Shown here piece after piece: positions 32,987 to 49,250 of a stretch of 64,000 nucleotides of DNA. The DNA is from Podarcis liolepis (lineage: Eukaryota): NCBI GenBank assembly GCA_965112155.1, contig OZ218105.1; one strand, given 5' to 3'. Positions within the stretch are counted from its first letter, which is position 1. Each line of letters opens with the position of its first letter. The position numbers and the translations under genes were made by a program. The notes under the pieces are model-generated. The model was not told the DNA's origin and ran no database searches. It saw nothing but the letters and a program-made list of their open reading frames with translations.

Positions 32987-33226
32987 TGCAGAATGGTGCA
33001 ATGAAGATATAGGAGTTTTGAAGCAATTGTAGCTGCAAATAAGGTATGGAGTAGCGAGGTCCTATTGGGTAGATATTGGCAATGGCTGGATACATTTTAT
33101 TAATTTCCAAATGTCAGTTTTAATCCTGCTTGTTAACTCCAAAGTTTCAGCAGCTCCTTGTCTTTTGTTGACTTTGGACGCGATGAAATTACAACTCATT
33201 GAAACATTCACACTTTTCTTCCTCAG

Positions 33227-33467
33227 GCTTCACATATTTCTACAAAGGCAAGGAATACTGGAAATTCAACAACCAGATGCTCAAAGTAGAACCTGGATAT
33301 CCCAGATCCATCCTAAAGGATTTTATGGGTTGTGATGGACCAGCAGACCGGGACAAAGACCGACACAGCCCTCAGGATGACGTAGACATTGTCATCAAAC
33401 TGGACAACACAGCCAGCACTGTGAAAGCCATAGCCATTGTCATTCCCTGCATCCTGGCCCTGTGCCT
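33227..33467 (+). CDS. MMP16: MMP16 terminal coding exon, visible part (end of hemopexin domain, stalk, start of TM helix); continues into the N gap, stop predicted ~33559-33561
   Basis: Acceptor cctcag|GC TTC. Translates to (G)FTYFYKGKEYWKFNNQMLKVEPGYPRSILKDFMGCDGPADRDKDRHSPQDDVDIVIKLDNTASTVKAIAIVIPCILALC. The stop position is inferred from the recalled vertebrate C-terminus (...LYCKRSMQEWV). Confidence 0.95.
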
Positions 33468-33621
33468 NNNNNNNNNNNNNNNNNNNNNNNNNNNNNNNNN
33501 NNNNNNNNNNNNNNNNNNNNNNNNNNNNNNNNNNNNNNNNNNNNNNNNNNNNNNNNNNNNNNNNNNNNNNNNNNNNNNNNNNNNNNNNNNNNNNNNNNNN
33601 NNNNNNNNNNNNNNNNNNNNN
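33468..33621. other. 154-nt run of N (assembly gap or masked segment)
   Basis: Directly visible. It covers the expected MMP16 TM/cytoplasmic tail, stop codon and first ~60 nt of 3' UTR. Confidence 1.
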
Positions 33622-36600
33622 ACTTGAGATCAACAGAAGAGCTGTTATGCAGTTTCCTATCTAGGAGCAGGCATCTGTCCAGCCCCTCGACCAGGGCTGA
33701 TCTTTAAAACCCAGGGGGCTACCTGCACCCTGCACAGGAAGTAAGAGTTCACTCCAGTGGGAAGCTTCCATCGTACACAGTATCTGCCGTTCCTCCAGTT
33801 CTTTTGTCTTTCTTTGTCATTCGGTTCTAGCCTTTTTCCTCTCTGCACGCTCAGTACACCCAATGCAAAACTATCGGGATTTTTCCATAAAGAAGAGGAA
33901 ATGTTACATCAAAAATATAGGAAAACAAGAAGCGTCTCCAGTGTCTCTCTTGGGGTTTTTTCTGTCCCCTTTGAAGCCTGCTCCCCTTTGAAAGAGTTTT
34001 GCGTGAGGTTTAAAAAAAAAACAATAATAAAAATGTAATCATTTTTTTTTTAAAAAAAGAGAAAAGATAGAGCAACTATAACACAACAATCACAATGGAA
34101 CTTTCAGGAAGTGTGAAGACCCAAAACAGCTTTGTCTCCAAAGAGGATTGCTTTCTGTCAGCTACGGATATAGTCCTATACTCCTACTCATAATTTTTGT
34201 TAAGTGGGAGACCAGGATGACACACAGGAATTCAGACTGTTTGGACAGCCATTTTCCAACAAATAAGGGGCCAAAATATCTGCAATATAGTAACAGCCTT
34301 AATGATACATTCATTTTGTGTTTTATACAGCTGTTCTGAGCTATGTCCTCAATGTTTTAACACATTTATATTCATTACTATATTCAGATAGTATCTTTTT
34401 TATTGATTGGTTTAGATTTTGTTGGTTTCCTGCCTCCTCCTCTTCTTTTTCTTTCTTCCTCCCCCCCCCCCCCCGAGCTGTACCAGGCCAGCAGCCCCAG
34501 GCCTCCCACAGGTCTGTCAAGAACACTTAATGTTGAAACCATAGCAGAATGCAGCAAGCCTGTGAAGTAGATTGCAGTGAACTAAAGTGACACTTAATGT
34601 TACAGAGAAACATAATGCTAGTATTAGGTTTGTGTAATCTGTGACCCTTTGAGAACTATAGGTTTTCAGAGTTTCAAGGGCTGTGAACATTGGCAGTCTG
34701 GAAATTATAGGAATGCACAGCTTTAAAAGATTCTGGATTCTAAAGCTTATTTCCTGTGATTTACGAGTTCCTTTGTAGGTGGTCCATAAACCATATCAGT
34801 TCTGCAAATCCTCTCCTTCCTTCCCTCTTAGCATCACTGACTTCTGTCTCTCTCTCTCCTCCTTCTAGTGGCTTTATGCACTCTAGTTTCTATATGACAC
34901 TATATAGTACCATAACAAAACATGGCAGCTGAGACCAGCATGCCAGAAGTCATCAGGATTGGCAGGTACACAGGGCAGGTTGGTAGGTCTGTAAGTGGAT
35001 TAGATACCACACAATTAGAATAACCTAAAATAAGAAAGCGTTTTAAAAAAAATGATTTGCTCACTCTGTTGATGGTGATATAACAGAAGCAAACAATATT
35101 AGATAATTATTATTTTAAAACAATACATTGCAGCAGACAGAATACAAGTGGCTGCAAGTATAGCTGGTCTTTGGTTTCTCAAGATGTGTTATGCTAAGCC
35201 ATTGCAGGAGTCCTCCCACATCTCTGTTGCTTCTTTTATCCAGTCTTCATTGCTCCATGCAATGGTAGCCCCCAGTAACAAGGACCTGACATCCATTTAT
35301 GCTATTGATAGTGTATGTCCTAAGTATTTTGTTTTCATTGCCACCACACACCAACAAACATGGCAATGTTTGCAATGTGTGACACCAATGTGTTGCCATG
35401 CAGATTCCCTTTCATTTTGCTACAGGGCTTTTACATGGGTATGGGCAGTGTAACAGCGAACCACAGTGGCCGAGACTGAAAAGCTGGAAGCGAGTAAGTC
35501 TCGAGACAGACAGCTGCAGTTTTTAGCAAGATGAAGGAAGTATGATAGAGGCAACATTGTCTATGGGATGTATCTCTGTTCATTGCTTTTGCAGTCCCTG
35601 TAGTAGTGCTGCAAAACCCATTGATTAGAAATGACAGCAGGGAAAAAAGAAATCACTTTCGACATCCCAAGAAACAATGCTGCTGTCATATCACCTTCAA
35701 CTCTCATAAAAGCTTTTGTCTTTCTCCAGTCTGAGAGCAACAGGAACATGGGATTGATGATGGAACCAGGTGGAACTCTCTTGTCCAACAACTAGCGTAG
35801 CGCTTGAGTTTGTGTTCTGCTTAACTCTTGCGTTTTTAAACTGTATTGCAGGATTATTCTGTTTGCCTTGCATCATATAGATATGCAGGTGCAGATAACA
35901 GTTCCAATGGAAACCAGAGAGCAAGGACTCTGTCGTTTCATGGTGCTGCCTCTCCCATTGCAAAGTGTTGCCAATCGGGCGTTTGCCTTAGTTCCCAAAG
36001 GGTCACAAGTCCTCTGGCATTTAGCTGTGCATTAAATCACTGACAGAACCAAGGGAGCACCAAAGCATTGTGTCATCATGTGTAATATTTGTGCTAACAG
36101 CAGTATTGTCGTTTTCATGTGACCTGCAGGGCAGGTTATGTATCAATATTTTTTCCTAGAGAAAAGTCAGCAACTGACAGACCTCTTTTTATTGATTTTA
36201 GGAACTGCTTCTTGCAGTGACAGGCTTTTTACAGTCACTAGGCTGTGAACTTATTAAAGGTGTTCAGAAAGGATGCACCCCACATGTCAGATACCTGGCT
36301 TTTTATGAAAGCTGGGATTCCAGGGGAGTAGCTTTTGAAACAATGAACAGCTTGCCTTGAACTTTATTGATCTGTTGATTGTCATTACTGAGTTAAACAT
36401 AGTCTTCTGTGGAAAAGAAAAGAAAAAAAACCTTTGCTGTCTGAATTTCCTTACAGTGTACTGTTTGATGTCTTTGCTCTTTGACCTTTAACTTGCAAAC
36501 CGGCACAAACTCAGTGGGAAATCTGGTGTGGCTGATCTAATTTGGATTGGGACTAGGCTTTTACAACAAAGAGAGTCCTATCTATACATTGTCCAAACAT

Positions 36601-44700: not shown

Positions 44701-45928
44701 CTGATATGTTCTGCTTATTATAAAATCAGCGTATTAACTTCCCCTTTTTTGGTTAAAAATCCTTTTCTTGACTCTGCACATACAAGGTCTACTCTTAAAT
44801 TAAACCACATCTGGTTTTGAGTTACATACCTTTAACCAGATAACACATGAAAATGTCTTTTAGGTAGTCCTAAAAACAAGCCAGAATGGAAACTGCCTAT
44901 CATGCCTAAATACTTTATCAGAACCAACTCCTTTATACAGGCAGTTGTTCTTATGGTGGTCACACTGTATGAGATCCATCAAAACAGCAAGCTCTATACA
45001 CCTGTGTTAAGGTATTCAGTCTTATTTTTCCCCGCTTGTGCACATACATATTCTGTGCCAGAGTTTGGTTCACAGTGCTGCATGTAAGCAAAGAGACAGT
45101 GACAGCATTTTCCTATTTTCAGAGAGCTGATTTCTTTTACATTACTTTAATTTTATGTTACTGTACGACTCCCACAACATTCTTTGCATTAATAATATTT
45201 TTTAATAAATACCATTTTTTTTCTCTTTCAAGTAGTTTCTGTGGACAAACACAAAGCTTGTTTGTGTGCAAAACCAAGGCTGACTAAATGGTGCTAAAGT
45301 GTATATTGACTGTCAGATATAATCAGGCAAAAATTTGTGGTGCTTAGACAGATTTTTTTTCATTGTTTCTTTATTTTCTTGATCAATGCATTTAACAGTG
45401 TTTTATTATACACACATTCTTTTATTAGTAAATGAAGGCCTCATAGTGCACTATTAAATAAAAAAAATGGGTTAACTAATCTATGTACCAGCTCACCAAG
45501 CTATTATCGTTTAACTCCTTATAATATTGCATAATTAAAGGTCAAGGGGTCATGATATTAATCTCATTGCTGTTCACTCATTACATGACTGAACATTTTT
45601 GAACAAAATACTTATGTTTACAATAGTATAATAACCCTTTGACTGCTGCGGCAACCTTTAACCACGAAATTAAAACGTCACATGCTAGAATTGTCTTTTT
45701 GGTTCTTGTCCTGGCAATCAAAGAGTTAAGGGCTGTGCAGTGATTTGTTTTCTATTTATTAATTTCTATTTATTTTTTTGTTTTCATTTGAGGAGGGGGG
45801 TCCGGGGTGGGGCAGTTCTCGTCTGCTGTAAGTGTCTTAACCAAGGGAAGGGTTAAAAATTGCTTTTTTTATACTATCTTATGTACTTACCATCATTTCA
45901 TTGTGTTGTAATTAAAAAAAAACCTGTC

Positions 45929-45934
45929 AATAAA
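45929..45934 (+). promoter_or_regulatory. Candidate distal polyadenylation signal of MMP16
   Basis: AATAAA with upstream UGUA motifs (atgtac, ttgtaa) and downstream GU/U-rich ctgtcgtggtttcattt. Repeat density rises immediately afterwards. Confidence 0.6.
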
Positions 45935-46247
45935 TAAGAAAGCAGAAGCAGCGTTTCTTAAATCTGTCGTGGTTTCATTTAGATTGTTGTCTGATTTGAA
46001 CAGCGGGAAGTGAGCACCTTCTGCCATTTATCTGCTTCATACTTATGGCATATGGCGGAGGGGATACATATGGGCTGTGTGGAGGAACCTGCTCACTGGA
46101 GGTCATGGCTCTGCTGAGAAAAGGCATGAAACGTATCAAACACTATTTGTCTCAAAATTACAGATGGGTAGCCGTGCTGGTCTGCCATAGTCCAAATAAA
46201 AAAATTCCTTCCTGTAGCACCTTAAAGACCAACTAAGTTAGTTCTTG

Positions 46248-46285
46248 GTATAAGCTTTCGTGTGCATGCACACTTCTTCAGATAC
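46248..46285 (-). ncRNA. Minimal type I hammerhead ribozyme motif, mirror copy on the opposite strand
   Basis: Exact reverse complement of 46314-46351. Confidence 0.8.
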
Positions 46286-46313
46286 ACAGTGTACAGATAC
46301 ACAGATACTCAGT

Positions 46314-46351
46314 GTATCTGAAGAAGTGTGCATGCACACGAAAGCTTATAC
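46314..46351 (+). ncRNA. Minimal type I hammerhead ribozyme motif (CUU site)
   Basis: GTAT-CTGAAGA-A-GTGTG-CATG-CACAC-GAAA-GC-TT^ATAC gives stem I, the CUGANGA core, stem II, GAAA and a palindromic AAGCTT stem III. Confidence 0.8.
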
Positions 46352-46479
46352 CAAGAACTAACTTAGTTGGTCTTTAAGGTGCTACAGGAAGGAATTTTTT
46401 TATTTTGTCTCAAAATTGTTCTTCAGCCAACCTGGTGCCCTTCAGATGTTTTGGACTACAACTCCCACAATGACCACAC

Positions 46480-47305
46480 AGCCCCCTGGACCCTATGTGG
46501 CACCATTAGCACAGGCTTGGCTTCACCATCCCCAGGTGGGGTGCCTGGAGGCCTCCGCCTACCTCAGCCAGTTGCCCAATCCTGTCTGGGGAGGCGTTGC
46601 CAAGTTGATCAGGCCAGGTAGGGGAAGGGACCACCCTGCCCACACAATAAGGGGAGGACCTTACCTGGGAATCGTCAGTAGGCTCCAGAGCTTCTCCAAC
46701 CCTACCCACCCTCAGTTAAGACTTCTTTTGCAGGTTAACCTTTTCTCCACAGGTACGCGGGCACTGCTACGTCAAGGTCACTGTTGAAGGGCCGGAAAGG
46801 AATTCTCCTGCATTGGCAGGTTTGCCTTTCCTGTAGCAAATGTCACAACTTTGGCGGTATTAGGCCTTGGGCAGAATCCTTTAGTCTATCTTCCCTAAAT
46901 GGGGGTGGGCGTGTAGCGGTGACCCACATCCCCCTTCTCTTTGCGGCGGCGATGCCAGAGTTCCCCGTTAAAGGGGTTGTTTGAGGGGAGGCTTTGGCCG
47001 TACGCCTAGAGGTCATCATTGCTCTCCCCTGCAACGGTGGCGTAATGGGGGCGGGCTCTCTCTGCTTGAACATATGTTCTCCAGAGCTAGCCCATCCTCC
47101 TCACACACTGGATAACCCTGATGTTCCCCAGATCCATGGTGGGGGACTGGGAGGGATAAACGCCCAATGCCTGAGCCAAGGTCTACCCACATCTGAAACA
47201 TAATAAAGTTGTGACCAATTTTAATCCCATAGCACGTTGTCTTGAGTTGTTATTCCAAATGGGGGGACCGCCCAGGGTTTGGGGGACTCCACCTGACCAC
47301 ACAAA
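46480..47305 (+). mobile_element. GC-rich retroelement terminal-repeat-like fragment (possibly DIRS/Ngaro or solo LTR)
   Basis: Abrupt GC/CpG-rich block that ends with AATAAAGTTGTGACC...TGTCTTGAGTTGTTATT and truncates a hAT MITE half at 46425-46475. No coding motif is recognised, so the class is tentative. Confidence 0.45.
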
Positions 47306-48627
47306 CAGCCGGCTGGGCCTGAAAGGAGTTAAAGTCCTAAACGAAGTTGTTGAAGGCTGTTCCACAGCATGGGACAGTAAATGCATTGCACTCAACACAG
47401 GTATATGGGAAGACACCCCCCCCCCATTGCCTCGCTATAAGCTAAAGTTGCCATGAAAATGTTAGGGGCCACCAGCAGAGCCTGTAAAAAAACATCTTCC
47501 TACATGCTGTTGGCTGCTTAGATTAGGAGGTTTAGTTAGGCAAACACATGGCATGCACAGCTTCTTTCCCCCCATGGCTCAGGGGAATAATTGAGCTGGA
47601 CCAATGGAGTCCCTGGAGCCTTGAAAATTGCCAGCTGTGAGTGCTAGCCTTGCTGTGTTAGAGCTGAGATTTGTATTGAGGACAACAAACAGAAGGGTTT
47701 AAACCAATTTATTGTAACACAAGCAACATTACTAGTTCGTTTAGAGCTCTTTAGGCAGAAATGAGGTTTTTCCTCATAGAGTTATTTAAATAAAAAAAAC
47801 CTAATTGTAATTGATGAGGGAGTCTCGAATTGAACTCAGTTGAGTTTGCTTTTCAGGTAGTTGGAGGACTGAACTACATAGATGGCCTTCTGACTTTTCA
47901 AATGCTATTGGTGGGAGGCTAGAGATGTGCTAAAGTTTCAGTGAAACACAAAGAGAGAGAAATCACTTCTGCCACTCCAGCTCCACTTCCTGAATGGTGC
48001 CCCCATGCGTATAAACTGGAAGTCAGAAGAAAATAACTACCTGAAGGATCAAATTATGAATAGCATATTTGCATGACTTCATGGATGCCCTTTGTTTATC
48101 TTTATAGAGCACTTCCAATTCACATAAGAGTTACAGGACAATTTTTACAGGAAGTGTAGAAGGAGATAAACTGAATGAAGGAAACGTATGACATGACTAG
48201 TGCCCAAATGTGTGGTCAGTGGTTAGCTTCTCTGTGAATGTAAATCGGTGTCGACCTCTGGCCTGTGAATCTATTTTTGATAGTGCATGTCTGCCCTTTT
48301 ACTCAACTTTGAGTAAAACACAAACACAAACTATGCACTCTTCAACTCTTTGCATGATATTTGGAATTTGGGACACTGGCCTCAAGCTACTACTGACACA
48401 ATTGGCCTAAGGCTCTCTTGAACTGCTAGACAGAAAGGCAACTTTCCCAAAATAGCCTCCTTGAGAAAGGGTATTAGAAAGGCTGTGTGTGTGTGTGTGT
48501 AAAATGTGTTTTATTTGACATAGATGTTTCAGTTTATCTTTTGCTTTCCTCAATATTTTCCTAATTTTAGGTGCTAGCACAGGAAAAACCTTATCCCACA
48601 TCTCATCAATGCCTACACTTAGAGCAG

Positions 48628-48829
48628 TTACAGGTAGGTAGCCGTGTTGGTCTGCCATAGTCAAAATAAAAAAATTCCTTCCAGTAGCACCTTAAAGACC
48701 AACTAAGTTAGTTCTTGGTATGAGCTTTCGTGTGCATGGTATCTGAAGAAGTGTGCATGCACACGAAAGCTCATACCAAGAACTAACTTAGTTGGTCTTT
48801 AAGGTGCTACTGGAAGGAATTTTTTTATT
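48628..48829. mobile_element. Second fold-back Penelope-like mini-element of the same family
   Basis: Perfect 75-bp arms (48664-48738 / 48756-48830), the same one-sided tail and a 14-bp TSD TACACTTAGAGCAG (48614-48627 / 48830-48843). Confidence 0.9.
48737..48778 (+). ncRNA. Minimal type I hammerhead ribozyme motif (CUC site, 6-bp stem I)
   Basis: TGGTAT-CTGAAGA-A-GTGTG-CATG-CACAC-GAAA-GC-TC^ATACCA. Predicted cleavage is after C48772. Confidence 0.82.
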
Positions 48830-48914
48830 TACACTTAGAGCAGGATAACTTGGAAACAAATTATTAAAATAATTATGGACAAGTGTTGAAGACCCTTTTA
48901 TAGCTTAGACATTA

Positions 48915-49250
48915 CCTCTTGAAGGCACAGCATGGATAATTTCATATACTCTTACTATGCAAATGCAAATACTGTAGCCATAGGGGAGTTGTTCCAGCGA
49001 CTTGATAATTTGGGTTGTCCTTTTCTGAAACTTTTCTACAACAATCTTTTTGATGCCGGAAAACCAGAACTGCACACAGTATTCCGACTCTGAATGCACT
49101 GTAGATTTTATAATGGCCTTACAATATCAGCAATTTTATTTTCAATCCCTTTCCTAATGATCCCTTACATGTGATGTAACCTTTTCACAGCTGTCACACA
49201 CTTCATTGGCATCTTCATCAAGCTATTCACTATGACTCCAAGCTCTCATT
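48915..49250 (-). mobile_element. Degraded CR1 ORF2 fragment
   Basis: EYCVQFWFSGIKKIVVEKFQKRTTQIIKSLEQLPY matches the CR1 motif LEYCVQFWSP...LEKVQKRATKMIKGLE.LPY. Confidence 0.85.

What the first reader, a model, noticed from the sequence alone, without database searches (positions are those of the whole stretch)
46160..48843. Hammerhead ribozyme motifs in two young fold-back Penelope-like mini-elements
Seen: the core CTGAAGA...GAAA...CUH occurs at 46314-46351 (+), 46248-46285 (-) and 48737-48778 (+). Each has stem I (GTAT/ATAC or TGGTAT/ATACCA), an extra A after A9, a fully palindromic stem II (GTGTGCATGCACAC) and a loop-less palindromic stem III (AGCT). Established: Penelope-like retroelements carry minimal type I hammerheads, and those with such a short stem III are thought to cleave as dimers. 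Inference: these ~200-250 bp non-coding elements with 14-bp TSDs belong to a recently active, ribozyme-bearing lizard PLE family, or are a non-autonomous derivative of one. The general class is known, but this family and architecture may be undescribed.
Basis: partly seen in the sequence, partly recalled or inferred. Interest (0 to 1): 0.82.

Follow-up and report, generated by a model that had tools for sequence, protein, structure and literature searches.

The report
Dead-on-arrival fold-back Penelope retroelement insertions
Two tiny hairpin-shaped insertions in a lizard genome are young stubs left by a Penelope-like jumping gene; each carries that gene's small hammerhead ribozyme motif as a passenger, which is the known insertion signature of this transposon class and not a new kind of element.

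Summary
E1 (46160-46403) and E2 (48628-48829) are inverted-repeat insertions with perfect 14-bp target-site duplications.

The motifs have the published traits of Penelope-like-element (PLE) minimal hammerheads:
- an extra base after A9
- a G10.1-C11.1 pair
- a palindromic, loop-less helix III
- a short helix I

Rfam's hammerhead models miss them.

E2 is young. Single-copy contigs from three related organisms show the empty site with one copy of the duplicated 14-mer. The family runs to thousands of copies or more and its RNA is present.

The architecture is not new. Two head-to-head 5'-truncated 3' ends, with a 34-36-nt "tail" at one end only, is the described PLE insertion signature.

In these copies the ribozyme is probably inert. 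Each strand carries one sense motif beside its perfect antisense, the whole transcript folds into a hairpin (-141 to -178 kcal/mol), and no RNA reads start or end at the predicted cut sites.

I could not test the link to an RT/GIY-YIG ORF.

The scan has already noted many such fold-backs in this genome, and follow-up s1-846418 reached the same verdict. Known kind, low interest.

The parts
46146..46159 (.). E1 target-site duplication, left copy (TTTGTCTCAAAATT)
   Evidence: family D7, 14/14 identical to 46404-46417
46160..46193 (-). E1 'tail': a 34-nt extension present only on the minus-sense arm. It holds an ATG in a GACTATGG context that stays open to the tail's end.
   Evidence: the arms diverge after ...TTTTTTTATTT and the left arm continues for 34 nt. 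The length matches the 30-40-bp PLE tail.
46194..46288 (-). E1 left arm: the PLE 3' end, from the hammerhead to the inner reverse-transcription start site, sense on the minus strand
   Evidence: 100% identical to the right arm
46248..46285 (-). Minimal type I hammerhead motif, minus strand; predicted cut between 46252 and 46251
46289..46309 (.). E1 inversion centre: filler that repeats CAGATACACAG, the antisense of the arm's 5' end
   Evidence: direct reading
46310..46403 (+). E1 right arm, sense on the plus strand, without a tail (the end is ambiguous by up to 2 T, to 46405)
   Evidence: Family members diverge 5' of 46309 (table 7).
46314..46351 (+). Minimal type I hammerhead motif, plus strand; predicted cut after 46347 (H17 = U)
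   Evidence: Helices I and II form in the isolated 47-mer.
46404..46417 (.). E1 target-site duplication, right copy
   Evidence: D7
48614..48627 (.). E2 target-site duplication, left copy (TACACTTAGAGCAG)
   Evidence: D8. It is present only once in the empty-site contigs of three related organisms (table 5: joint 48613->48830, 14 letters fitting either side).
48628..48663 (-). E2 tail, 36 nt, on the minus-sense arm only
48664..48738 (-). E2 left arm, 5'-truncated in the middle of helix II, so it has no complete hammerhead
48739..48829 (+). E2 right arm, sense on the plus strand, without a tail
   Evidence: Family members diverge 5' of 48739 (table 7).
48737..48778 (+). Minimal type I hammerhead motif; predicted cut after 48772 (H17 = C). 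The 6-bp helix I borrows 2 nt from the junction.
48830..48843 (.). E2 target-site duplication, right copy
   Evidence: D8; table 5

Best explanation
E1 and E2 are two independent, dead-on-arrival insertions made by the reverse transcriptase/GIY-YIG endonuclease machinery of a Penelope-like element (PLE) that is very abundant in this lizard lineage.

Each insertion consists of two head-to-head copies of only the last ~95 nt of the element's pseudo-LTR. That stretch runs from the 5' edge of the hammerhead to the reverse-transcription start. One arm carries the PLE-specific 34-36-nt 'tail'. Each insertion is flanked by a 14-bp target-site duplication.

Favoured mechanism (inferred, roughly even odds against the self-priming variant listed under rivals):
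1. The endonuclease nicks both target strands 14 bp apart.
2. Each 3'-OH primes cDNA synthesis on pLTR RNA at one of two adjacent internal start sites: ...UUUAUUU, or 34-36 nt further downstream.
3. Both cDNAs run only to about the 5' edge of the hammerhead and are joined head to head.

The hammerheads are the element's ordinary minimal, dimer-dependent, probably protein-assisted ribozyme, carried along as passengers. In these copies they are most likely inert.
For: Shown:
- Perfect 14-bp duplications flank both elements.
- E2 is absent, with a single copy of the 14-mer, in single-copy-depth contigs of three related organisms (table 5, joint 48613->48830; table 8).
- The two arms are 100% identical within each copy, while the copies differ from each other at 2 arm positions.
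- The tail is 34 nt (E1) or 36 nt (E2) and sits on one arm only.
- The hammerhead descriptor hits only these three sites, with 0 in 200 shuffles.
- Depth over the arms is 10^3-10^4 times single-copy depth in three organisms, and RNA reads cover the arms (table 2).
- Other family copies have fold-back junctions at many different positions (table 5).
- Longer copies continue 5' of the hammerhead with one conserved sequence (table 7: 158 RNA reads, agreement 0.96).

From the literature:
- The PLE insertion signature is an inverted 5'-truncated copy, a 30-40-bp tail at one end, and a TSD (PMC8557442; PMC3846280).
- Minimal-hammerhead traits are given in PMC4209133.
- The Anolis Poseidon protein cuts and extends both target strands. 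It starts reverse transcription at two internal sites whose spacing defines the tail, about 85-92 nt past the hammerhead cut (PMC11167929). Here the distance is 58 nt without the tail and 92-94 nt with it.

Reasons to think the ribozyme is inert here:
- Whole-element RNA folds into a near-perfect hairpin of -177.6/-170.9 kcal/mol (E1) and -140.7/-132.5 kcal/mol (E2).
- There is only one sense motif per strand.
- No pile-up of read starts or ends occurs at 46347/8, 48772/3 or 46251/2 (table 6).
Against: - No RT/GIY-YIG ORF of this family could be reached. There is none in the window, and the scans of public collections and papers were blank.
- The published Anolis Poseidon_Ac consensus is a different sequence family.
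- The target sites are not notably AT-rich (0.61-0.63 against a window average of 0.59). Only one of the four inferred nicks follows ATT.
- E1's absence from relatives could not be assessed because its flanks are repetitive.
- The RNA-seq run comes from a related organism and is ordinary fragment sequencing, so missing cleavage ends are weak evidence.
- The depth ratios are not true copy numbers, as the tool itself warns.
Confidence: 0.8

Rival explanations
1. Same identity (a PLE-made stub), but a different origin for the fold-back. A single cDNA primed at the tail site reaches the hammerhead region, self-primes or switches template onto itself, and copies itself back. The palindromic helix II and the template's 5' end would favour this. 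The hairpin strand is then made double-stranded. This is a variant of the mechanism, not of the identity.
For: - The arms are 100% identical within each copy, although the copies differ from each other.
- Arkhipova et al. 2013 infer self-priming from palindromes at PLE inversion junctions (PMC3846280).
- E2's junction lies inside the helix II palindrome.
- E1's centre repeats the arm's terminal 11 nt.
- Unverified scan notes report other copies folded exactly at helix II.
Against: - It does not explain why the copied-back arm stops in both elements at the same ...TTTTTTTATTT, 34-36 nt short of its template's end. Two discrete reverse-transcription start sites used on both target strands are what was measured in vitro for the Anolis PLE.
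- At E2's junction, the 3' end of the longer cDNA has no base pairing with the point where copying would restart (direct reading).
Confidence: 0.3
2. The ~200-250-bp fold-back is itself a non-autonomous, SINE-like or retrozyme-like element. It would be transcribed, processed by its hammerheads and re-inserted by PLE enzymes as a unit.
For: - Depth over the arms is very high.
- Both elements have the same outer termini.
- Unverified scan notes list many fold-backs of 200-260 bp in this genome.
- PLE-derived non-autonomous retrozymes are proposed for vertebrates (bioRxiv 10.64898/2026.07.22.740005).
Against: - The inversion junction differs between E1, E2 and other family copies (table 5), so the unit is not copied as such.
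- The TATA-bearing sequence found 5' of the hammerhead in longer copies is missing from both elements (table 7), so they carry no evident promoter.
- There is no tandem arrangement.
- No circular or back-joined RNA reads were seen (table 5: X23 shows zero in every joint listed; 269 further joints were not shown).
- A transcript of the unit would be a perfect hairpin that masks the ribozyme and the reverse-transcription start region.
Confidence: 0.1
3. A miniature inverted-repeat DNA transposon (MITE), or an exapted hairpin-RNA/microRNA gene that resembles a hammerhead only by chance.
For: - The element is an inverted repeat flanked by direct repeats.
- Rfam microRNA-precursor models give sub-threshold hits to the hairpin (best 70 bits against a gathering score of 101).
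Against: - The termini are not inverted repeats. One end is the 34-36-nt tail (ACAG.../TTACAGG...) and the other is ...TTTATT.
- A 14-bp duplication is atypical for cut-and-paste transposons (established knowledge).
- The full hammerhead descriptor, with four independent PLE-specific traits, is met three times against 0 in 200 shuffles.
- The microRNA hits fall far below gathering scores and match any long hairpin.
- E2 is absent from related organisms, so it is not a conserved gene.
Confidence: 0.03

Closest known systems
Minimal hammerhead ribozymes of Penelope-like elements (Cervera & De la Pena 2014, PMC4209133; dimer cleavage shown by Lunse, Weinberg & Breaker, RNA Biol 2017, cited via PMC6765202)
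   Same: - Type I topology and the CUGANGA...GAAA core.
- An unpaired base between A9 and G10.1, and a G10.1-C11.1 pair.
- A loop-less palindromic helix III (A-GC-U) that can only form between two molecules.
- A short helix I (4 bp) and a helix II longer than the canonical 4 bp.
- Occurrence as solitary or opposite-strand pairs in truncated copies.
   Different: - This is a different sequence family from any I could compare, including Poseidon_Ac.
- Helix II is 5 bp with a self-complementary CAUG loop, not the 6-8 bp described.
- Catalysis was not tested here.
Canonical PLE insertion structure: pLTR, inverted 5'-truncated copy and one-sided 30-40-bp tail (Evgen'ev & Arkhipova 2005; Arkhipova et al. 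2013, PMC3846280; Craig et al. 2021, PMC8557442)
   Same: - Head-to-head inverted arms.
- A tail of 34-36 nt at one end only.
- A target-site duplication.
- A palindrome at or near the inversion junction.
- Strong 5' truncation.
   Different: This is an extreme miniature. Both arms stop at the hammerhead, so no ORF and no promoter region is included. The TSD is 14 bp, against 8-10 bp in the rotifer examples.
Poseidon_Ac (PAc) of Anolis carolinensis and its in vitro mechanism (Frangieh et al. 2024, PMC11167929)
   Same: - Lizard host.
- A hammerhead just upstream of, or overlapping, the ORF start.
- Two reverse-transcription start sites separated by the tail.
- The outer start lies ~90 nt past the hammerhead cut.
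- The uncleaved RNA is the template.
- No RNA-seq ends at the ribozyme cut site.
   Different: - No sequence similarity in the hammerhead or the tail region.
- In PAc the ORF starts at helix II. Here the ATG inside helix II is followed by a stop after 9 codons, and the only open ATG lies in the tail.
- AT-rich/ATT target preference is not evident here.
Metazoan non-LTR retrozymes (Cervera & De la Pena 2020, PMC7229834; Li, Clavereau & Pollet 2026 preprint)
   Same: Small, non-coding, hammerhead-bearing, probably mobilised by PLE enzymes, and abundant.
   Different: Retrozymes are head-to-tail tandem repeats of 150-450 bp with canonical type I hammerheads, and they are expressed as circular RNAs. 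Here the copies are inverted, not tandem, the hammerhead is the minimal PLE type, and no circular joints were seen.

Membership tests
PLE minimal hammerhead (min-HHR) | Conserved catalytic core C3-U4-G5-A6-N7-G8-A9 ... G12-A13-A14, A15.1-U16.1, H17 not G | tested here: met
   CUGAAGA ... GAAA-GC-U-U/C at all three sites
PLE minimal hammerhead (min-HHR) | Unpaired nucleotide between A9 and G10.1, and a G10.1-C11.1 pair | tested here: met
   The extra A is at 46325 / 48750. G46326 pairs with C46339. The trait is listed in PMC4209133.
PLE minimal hammerhead (min-HHR) | No helix III hairpin; positions 15.2-16.2 palindromic, so that helix III forms only in a dimer | tested here: met
   AGCU with no loop. 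The AGCU/AGCU duplex is -2.5 kcal/mol.
PLE minimal hammerhead (min-HHR) | Short helix I (4-5 bp) and a long helix II (6-8 bp) | tested here: inconclusive
   Helix I is 4 bp (6 bp in E2 only through junction bases). Helix II is 5 bp plus a CAUG loop, shorter than the described 6-8 bp.
PLE minimal hammerhead (min-HHR) | Mg2+-dependent site-specific self-cleavage as a dimer | not testable with these tools
   The only indirect test: no RNA-seq read starts or ends pile up at the predicted cut sites (table 6). The same negative result was reported for PAc.
Rfam Hammerhead families (e.g. RF00163 Hammerhead_1) | Score at or above the family's gathering threshold | tested here: not met
   No hammerhead hit at gathering scores or at E<=10. 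This is expected, because these models require a helix III hairpin.
Penelope-like element insertion | Inverted 5'-truncated copy joined head to head | tested here: met
   Arms are 105 nt (E1) and 80 nt (E2) by the repeat finder, and 100% identical over the shared element sequence
Penelope-like element insertion | 30-40-bp 'tail' extension at one end only | tested here: met
   34 nt (46160-46193) and 36 nt (48628-48663), absent from the right arms. Definition.
Penelope-like element insertion | Target-site duplication created on insertion | tested here: met
   14-bp perfect duplications. For E2, the empty site with one copy is present in three related organisms.
Penelope-like element insertion | Family members encode a telomerase-like RT with a GIY-YIG endonuclease | not testable with these tools
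   There is no such ORF in the window, no lizard genome is searchable here, and the public scans were blank. The only lead is unverified scan note s1-846063 (GIY-YIG frame, then a TATA box, then a hammerhead).
Metazoan non-LTR retrozyme | Head-to-tail tandem repeats that give circular RNAs | tested here: not met
   No tandem copies. No back-joined RNA reads (table 5: X23 shows zero in every joint listed; 269 further joints were not shown).
MITE / cut-and-paste DNA transposon | Terminal inverted repeats reaching both ends, and a short TSD of fixed, superfamily-typical length | tested here: not met
   The left terminus is the unpaired 34-36-nt tail and the termini are not complementary. The TSD is 14 bp.

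The most novel reading that the evidence does not exclude
The arms may not be randomly truncated. They may be run-off cDNAs of a very short pLTR-initiated RNA.

- Longer family copies carry TATATA about 30 nt upstream of a TCAGT initiator-like sequence. This predicts a transcription start at ~46311, which is where three of the four arms begin (46310, ~46288 on the other strand, 48739).
- Reverse transcription starts internally, only ~95 or ~130 nt downstream of that point. Any active pLTR promoter would therefore mainly produce ~100-nt cDNAs.
- With both target strands primed, once from each of the two start sites, this would yield the promoter-less ~200-260-bp hairpins seen all over this genome.

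If so, each young fold-back is an in vivo footprint of the double-strand priming and dual start sites so far shown only in vitro. The thousands of perfect hairpins could also be a built-in source of double-stranded RNA against the element.
Probability: 0.35. Interest if true: 0.5.

Novelty: new member of a known kind. Interest (0 to 1): 0.25.

Why it matters
Very little is new. The finding confirms that a hammerhead-bearing Penelope-like family has been active very recently in this lizard lineage, since E2 post-dates the split from relatives that differ by 0.5-1.5%. It also shows that the family's usual product is a tiny, promoter-less hairpin stub.

Its practical value is threefold:
1. These stubs should be annotated as PLE fragments, not as ribozyme genes, microRNA precursors or MITEs.
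2. Clean young copies with verified empty sites are natural test cases for the PLE integration mechanism proposed from in vitro work: two reverse-transcription start sites and priming on both strands.
3. Standard Rfam models miss this hammerhead class altogether.

Tried and rejected
- **Rfam.** The whole window at gathering scores and the region at E<=10 gave no hammerhead hit. The only hits were sub-threshold microRNA-precursor matches, which any long hairpin produces, so I rejected them.
- **More copies or a longer parent in the window.** blastn with word size 7 found only E1 and E2. The upstream consensus seen in reads is absent from the window.
- **Public collections.** I scanned for the hammerhead 28-mer in viral contigs and metagenome contigs, and for the tail 22-mer in metagenome contigs. 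All were blank. These collections hold little or no lizard DNA, so the blanks say nothing.
- **Full-text paper search** for the hammerhead and tail sequences: blank.
- **PLE ORF in the window.** There are seven ORFs of at least 130 aa. None has RT or GIY-YIG domains, and one is a host metalloproteinase exon.
- **Poseidon_Ac consensus** from the 2024 paper's supplement: a different family by eye. I did not align it, because that would have meant typing a long sequence into a tool.
- **Structure of the region between the hammerhead and the tail.** Its folding energy is no better than that of shuffled sequences (z = -0.63 and +0.63), so I claim no structured reverse-transcription start element.
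- **Isolated hammerhead monomers.** Helices I and II form in the minimum-energy fold, but the energy is unremarkable for E1 (z = -0.45). E2's z of -2.18 is due to its accidental 6-bp helix I.
- **Cofolding two monomers.** The result is dominated by an intermolecular 14-bp helix II duplex. A nested-structure program cannot evaluate the double-hammerhead fold, so I draw no conclusion from it.
- **Papers not held.** Lunse et al. 2017 (PMC5785218) and Pyatkov et al. 2004 (PMC522041) are not in the library. I cite them only through reviews.
- **Earlier scan findings searched by sequence:** blank.
- **E1 presence or absence in relatives.** Not resolved, because its flanks are repetitive and no bridging contig was listed.
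Full report
**1. What is in the sequence**

Reading 45900-49100 and running the repeat finder shows two short inverted-repeat elements.

| | E1 | E2 |
|---|---|---|
| Span | 46160-46403 (the end is ambiguous by up to 2 T) | 48628-48829 |
| Flanking duplication | TTTGTCTCAAAATT, 46146-59 and 46404-17 | TACACTTAGAGCAG, 48614-27 and 48830-43 |
| Match between the two copies | 14/14 | 14/14 |

The window holds no other copy (blastn, word size 7).

The 29-mer CTGAAGAAGTGTGCATGCACACGAAAGCT occurs three times, at 46318-46 (+), 46253-81 (-) and 48743-71 (+). None is expected by chance.

I wrote a structural descriptor for a minimal type I hammerhead. It requires CUGANGA, an optional bulge, helix II of at least 4 bp, GAAA, a self-complementary helix III, U16.1, H17, and helix I of at least 4 bp.

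Rfam's hammerhead models report nothing, even at E<=10. This is expected, because they require a helix III hairpin. The only Rfam hits are sub-threshold microRNA-precursor matches to the long hairpin, and these are generic.

**2. Anatomy**

I aligned the four arms in the ribozyme-sense orientation.

- Within each element the two arms are 100% identical, from helix II to ...TTTTTTTATTT.
- The two elements differ from each other at H17 (U in E1, C in E2; both are allowed) and at one A/T position.
- The left arm, which is sense on the minus strand, continues beyond ...TTTATTT for 34 nt in E1 (46160-46193) and 36 nt in E2 (48628-48663) before the duplication starts. The right arm does not. The termini are therefore not inverted repeats.
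- This one-sided extension contains an ATG in a GACTATGG context that stays open to its end.
- The 5' ends of the arms lie at 46310 (E1 right), about 46288 (E1 left), 48739 (E2 right) and 48738 (E2 left, in the middle of helix II).
- E1's centre (46289-46309) repeats the 11 nt at the end of the left arm.
- E2 therefore has only one complete hammerhead. Two of the six helix I pairs in that hammerhead are junction bases.

**3. Evidence from other genomes and from RNA**

The run search returned low-coverage DNA data from several coded, closely related organisms, plus RNA raw reads from one of them. I laid three DNA contig sets (organisms B, C and E) and one RNA run on 46100-48900.

- *(a) E2's empty site.* One contig per organism, at single-copy depth, joins 48613 directly to 48830. 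Fourteen letters fit either side of the joint, and 71 nt match beyond it. This is the empty site with a single copy of the TSD. E2 is a real insertion and is younger than the split from relatives that differ by about 0.5-1.5% in the unique spacer (table 8).
- *(b) E1.* Its flanks are repetitive and no bridging contig was listed, so its age is open.
- *(c) Abundance.* Summed depth over the arms is 10^3-10^4 times the single-copy depth in all three organisms. The tool warns that this is not a copy number, but the family is clearly very abundant.
- *(d) Variable junctions.* Many other joints link left-arm and right-arm positions at different points (46284->46318, 46284->46331, 48686->48755, 48692->48751, 48723->48755 and others). 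Fold-backs with different junctions therefore recur across the family. These joints have sides of only 18-25 nt, so they are moderately reliable.
- *(e) Longer copies.* 158 RNA reads (agreement 0.96), 135 RNA reads, and 61 DNA contigs of organism C continue 5' of 46309/48739 with one shared sequence: ACTATATAGAAGGATCTGGCAACTTCTGTT(TCAGT). Longer family members therefore exist and are transcribed, and E1 and E2 are truncated relative to them.
- *(f) RNA coverage.* RNA depth is 75-190 over the arms and zero over the unique spacer. 98% of the laid reads run on into unlike sequence, so they come from other loci.
- *(g) Cleavage ends.* No pile-up of read starts or ends occurs at the predicted cleavage sites. 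The single 'begin' peak, at 46171, lies where E1 departs from the family consensus and is probably an alignment clip.

**4. What it is**

The hammerhead has the four traits that Cervera & De la Pena list as emerging, beyond their search descriptor, in PLE minimal hammerheads (PMC4209133):

- a nucleotide between A9 and G10.1
- a G10.1-C11.1 pair
- palindromic 15.2-16.2 positions
- a short helix I with an enlarged helix II

The same paper already notes minimal hammerheads 100-700 bp apart on opposite strands, and attributes most solitary motifs to truncated PLEs.

The insertion architecture also matches published descriptions. [quoted passage not shown] Craig et al. 2021 describe this (PMC8557442). 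Arkhipova et al. 2013 report a 31-bp tail, 8-10-bp TSDs and palindromes at inversion junctions (PMC3846280).

Frangieh et al. 2024 studied the Anolis Poseidon element in vitro (PMC11167929). They report that:

- the protein cuts and extends both target strands
- reverse transcription starts at two adjacent internal RNA sites, and the interval between them is the tail
- the outer site lies about 85-92 nt past the hammerhead cut
- uncleaved RNA is the template
- RNA-seq shows no ends at the ribozyme cut

In E1 and E2 the distance from the cut to the arm's end is 58 nt without the tail and 92-94 nt with it. The arms include the whole ribozyme upstream of the cut, so the template was uncleaved.

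The Poseidon_Ac consensus itself is a different sequence family.

I conclude that E1 and E2 are dead-on-arrival PLE insertion stubs (confidence about 0.8). They are not a separate kind of element.

**5. How it most likely formed and works**

*Shown:* the insertion, the TSD, identical arms, the one-sided tail and the variable junctions.

*Inferred and favoured:*
1. Staggered nicks 14 bp apart.
2. cDNA primed from both 3'-OH ends, one at each of the two start sites.
3. Both cDNAs ending near the ribozyme's 5' edge and being joined there.

The main alternative mechanism is self-priming or template switching by a single cDNA, as proposed by Arkhipova et al. 2013. It explains the identical arms directly. 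It does not explain why the returning strand stops at the same ...TTTATTT in both elements.

Both arms could also be identical because both cDNAs copy one RNA, or two units of a single tandem transcript.

The ribozyme in these particular copies is probably inert, for four reasons:
- each transcript strand has one sense motif, whereas catalysis needs two
- the motif's perfect antisense lies within ~30 nt
- the full-element RNA folds into a near-perfect hairpin of -133 to -178 kcal/mol, depending on element and strand, against -8 to -12.5 kcal/mol for the isolated ribozyme fold
- no cleavage ends are seen

**6. A more speculative reading**

The shared upstream sequence of longer copies places TATATA about 30 nt before TCAGT, an initiator-like motif. 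This predicts a transcription start at about 46311, where three of the four arms begin. E1's centre also re-copies the terminal 11 nt, as a reverse transcriptase might at the end of a template.

If this is right, the arms are full-length cDNAs of a ~95/130-nt pLTR leader RNA. That would explain why unverified scan notes list many 200-260-bp fold-backs whose junction maps onto the ribozyme.

Two points count against it. The other family junctions scatter over about 20 nt inside the ribozyme. Most RNA reads crossing 46309 continue upstream. I give this reading about 0.35.

**7. Rivals rejected**

- *A self-replicating non-autonomous mini-element or retrozyme.* The junctions vary, the copies carry no promoter, there are no tandems and no circular joints were seen.
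- *A MITE.* The termini are not inverted, and the TSD is 14 bp.
- *A hairpin-RNA gene.* E2 is absent from close relatives, and the Rfam hits are sub-threshold.

**8. Limits**

- No lizard genome, Repbase or Dfam could be searched here. The ORF link, the family name and the conservation of core over flanks remain untested.
- Both metagenome scans, one viral-contig scan and a full-text sequence search were blank. These blanks are uninformative.
- The masked N run at 33468-33621 was left alone.

**9. Verdict**

Earlier follow-ups in this scan reached the same conclusion on other copies in this genome (s1-846418 and s1-846408).

Class: new member of a known kind. Interest: 0.25.

Noticed in passing
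window 33199-33624 (+): An ORF with Pfam Hemopexin and DUF3377 hits. It looks like the C-terminal exon of a membrane-type matrix metalloproteinase gene. It runs into the N run 33468-33621, which I left untouched.
   Followed up: partly
window 46426-46467: A ~40-bp piece of an extremely abundant repeat (contains GGACTACAACTCCCA). Hundreds of contigs and RNA reads break on both sides of it. It is probably a fragment of a lizard SINE that E1 inserted beside.
   Followed up: no
window 46476-47321: A mid-repetitive block at roughly 500-1500 times single-copy depth in three related organisms. I did not look for coding similarity beyond listing its ORFs.
   Followed up: no
window 46160-46193 and 48628-48663 (minus strand): The PLE tail carries an ATG with A at -3 and G at +4 that stays open to the tail's end (MADQHGY...). 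By analogy with other PLEs, whose pLTR plus tail include the first codons, this could be the parent element's ORF start. By contrast, the ATG inside helix II is closed after 9 codons.
   Followed up: partly
window 48826 (table 7): 147 RNA reads of the related organism leave the right arm at 48826 and continue with one fairly consistent sequence (agreement 0.7). This suggests one highly expressed locus, or a subfamily with a different 3' continuation.
   Followed up: no
window 48484-48500: A (GT)n microsatellite. The reads tool skipped 48475-48514 as a repeat.
   Followed up: no
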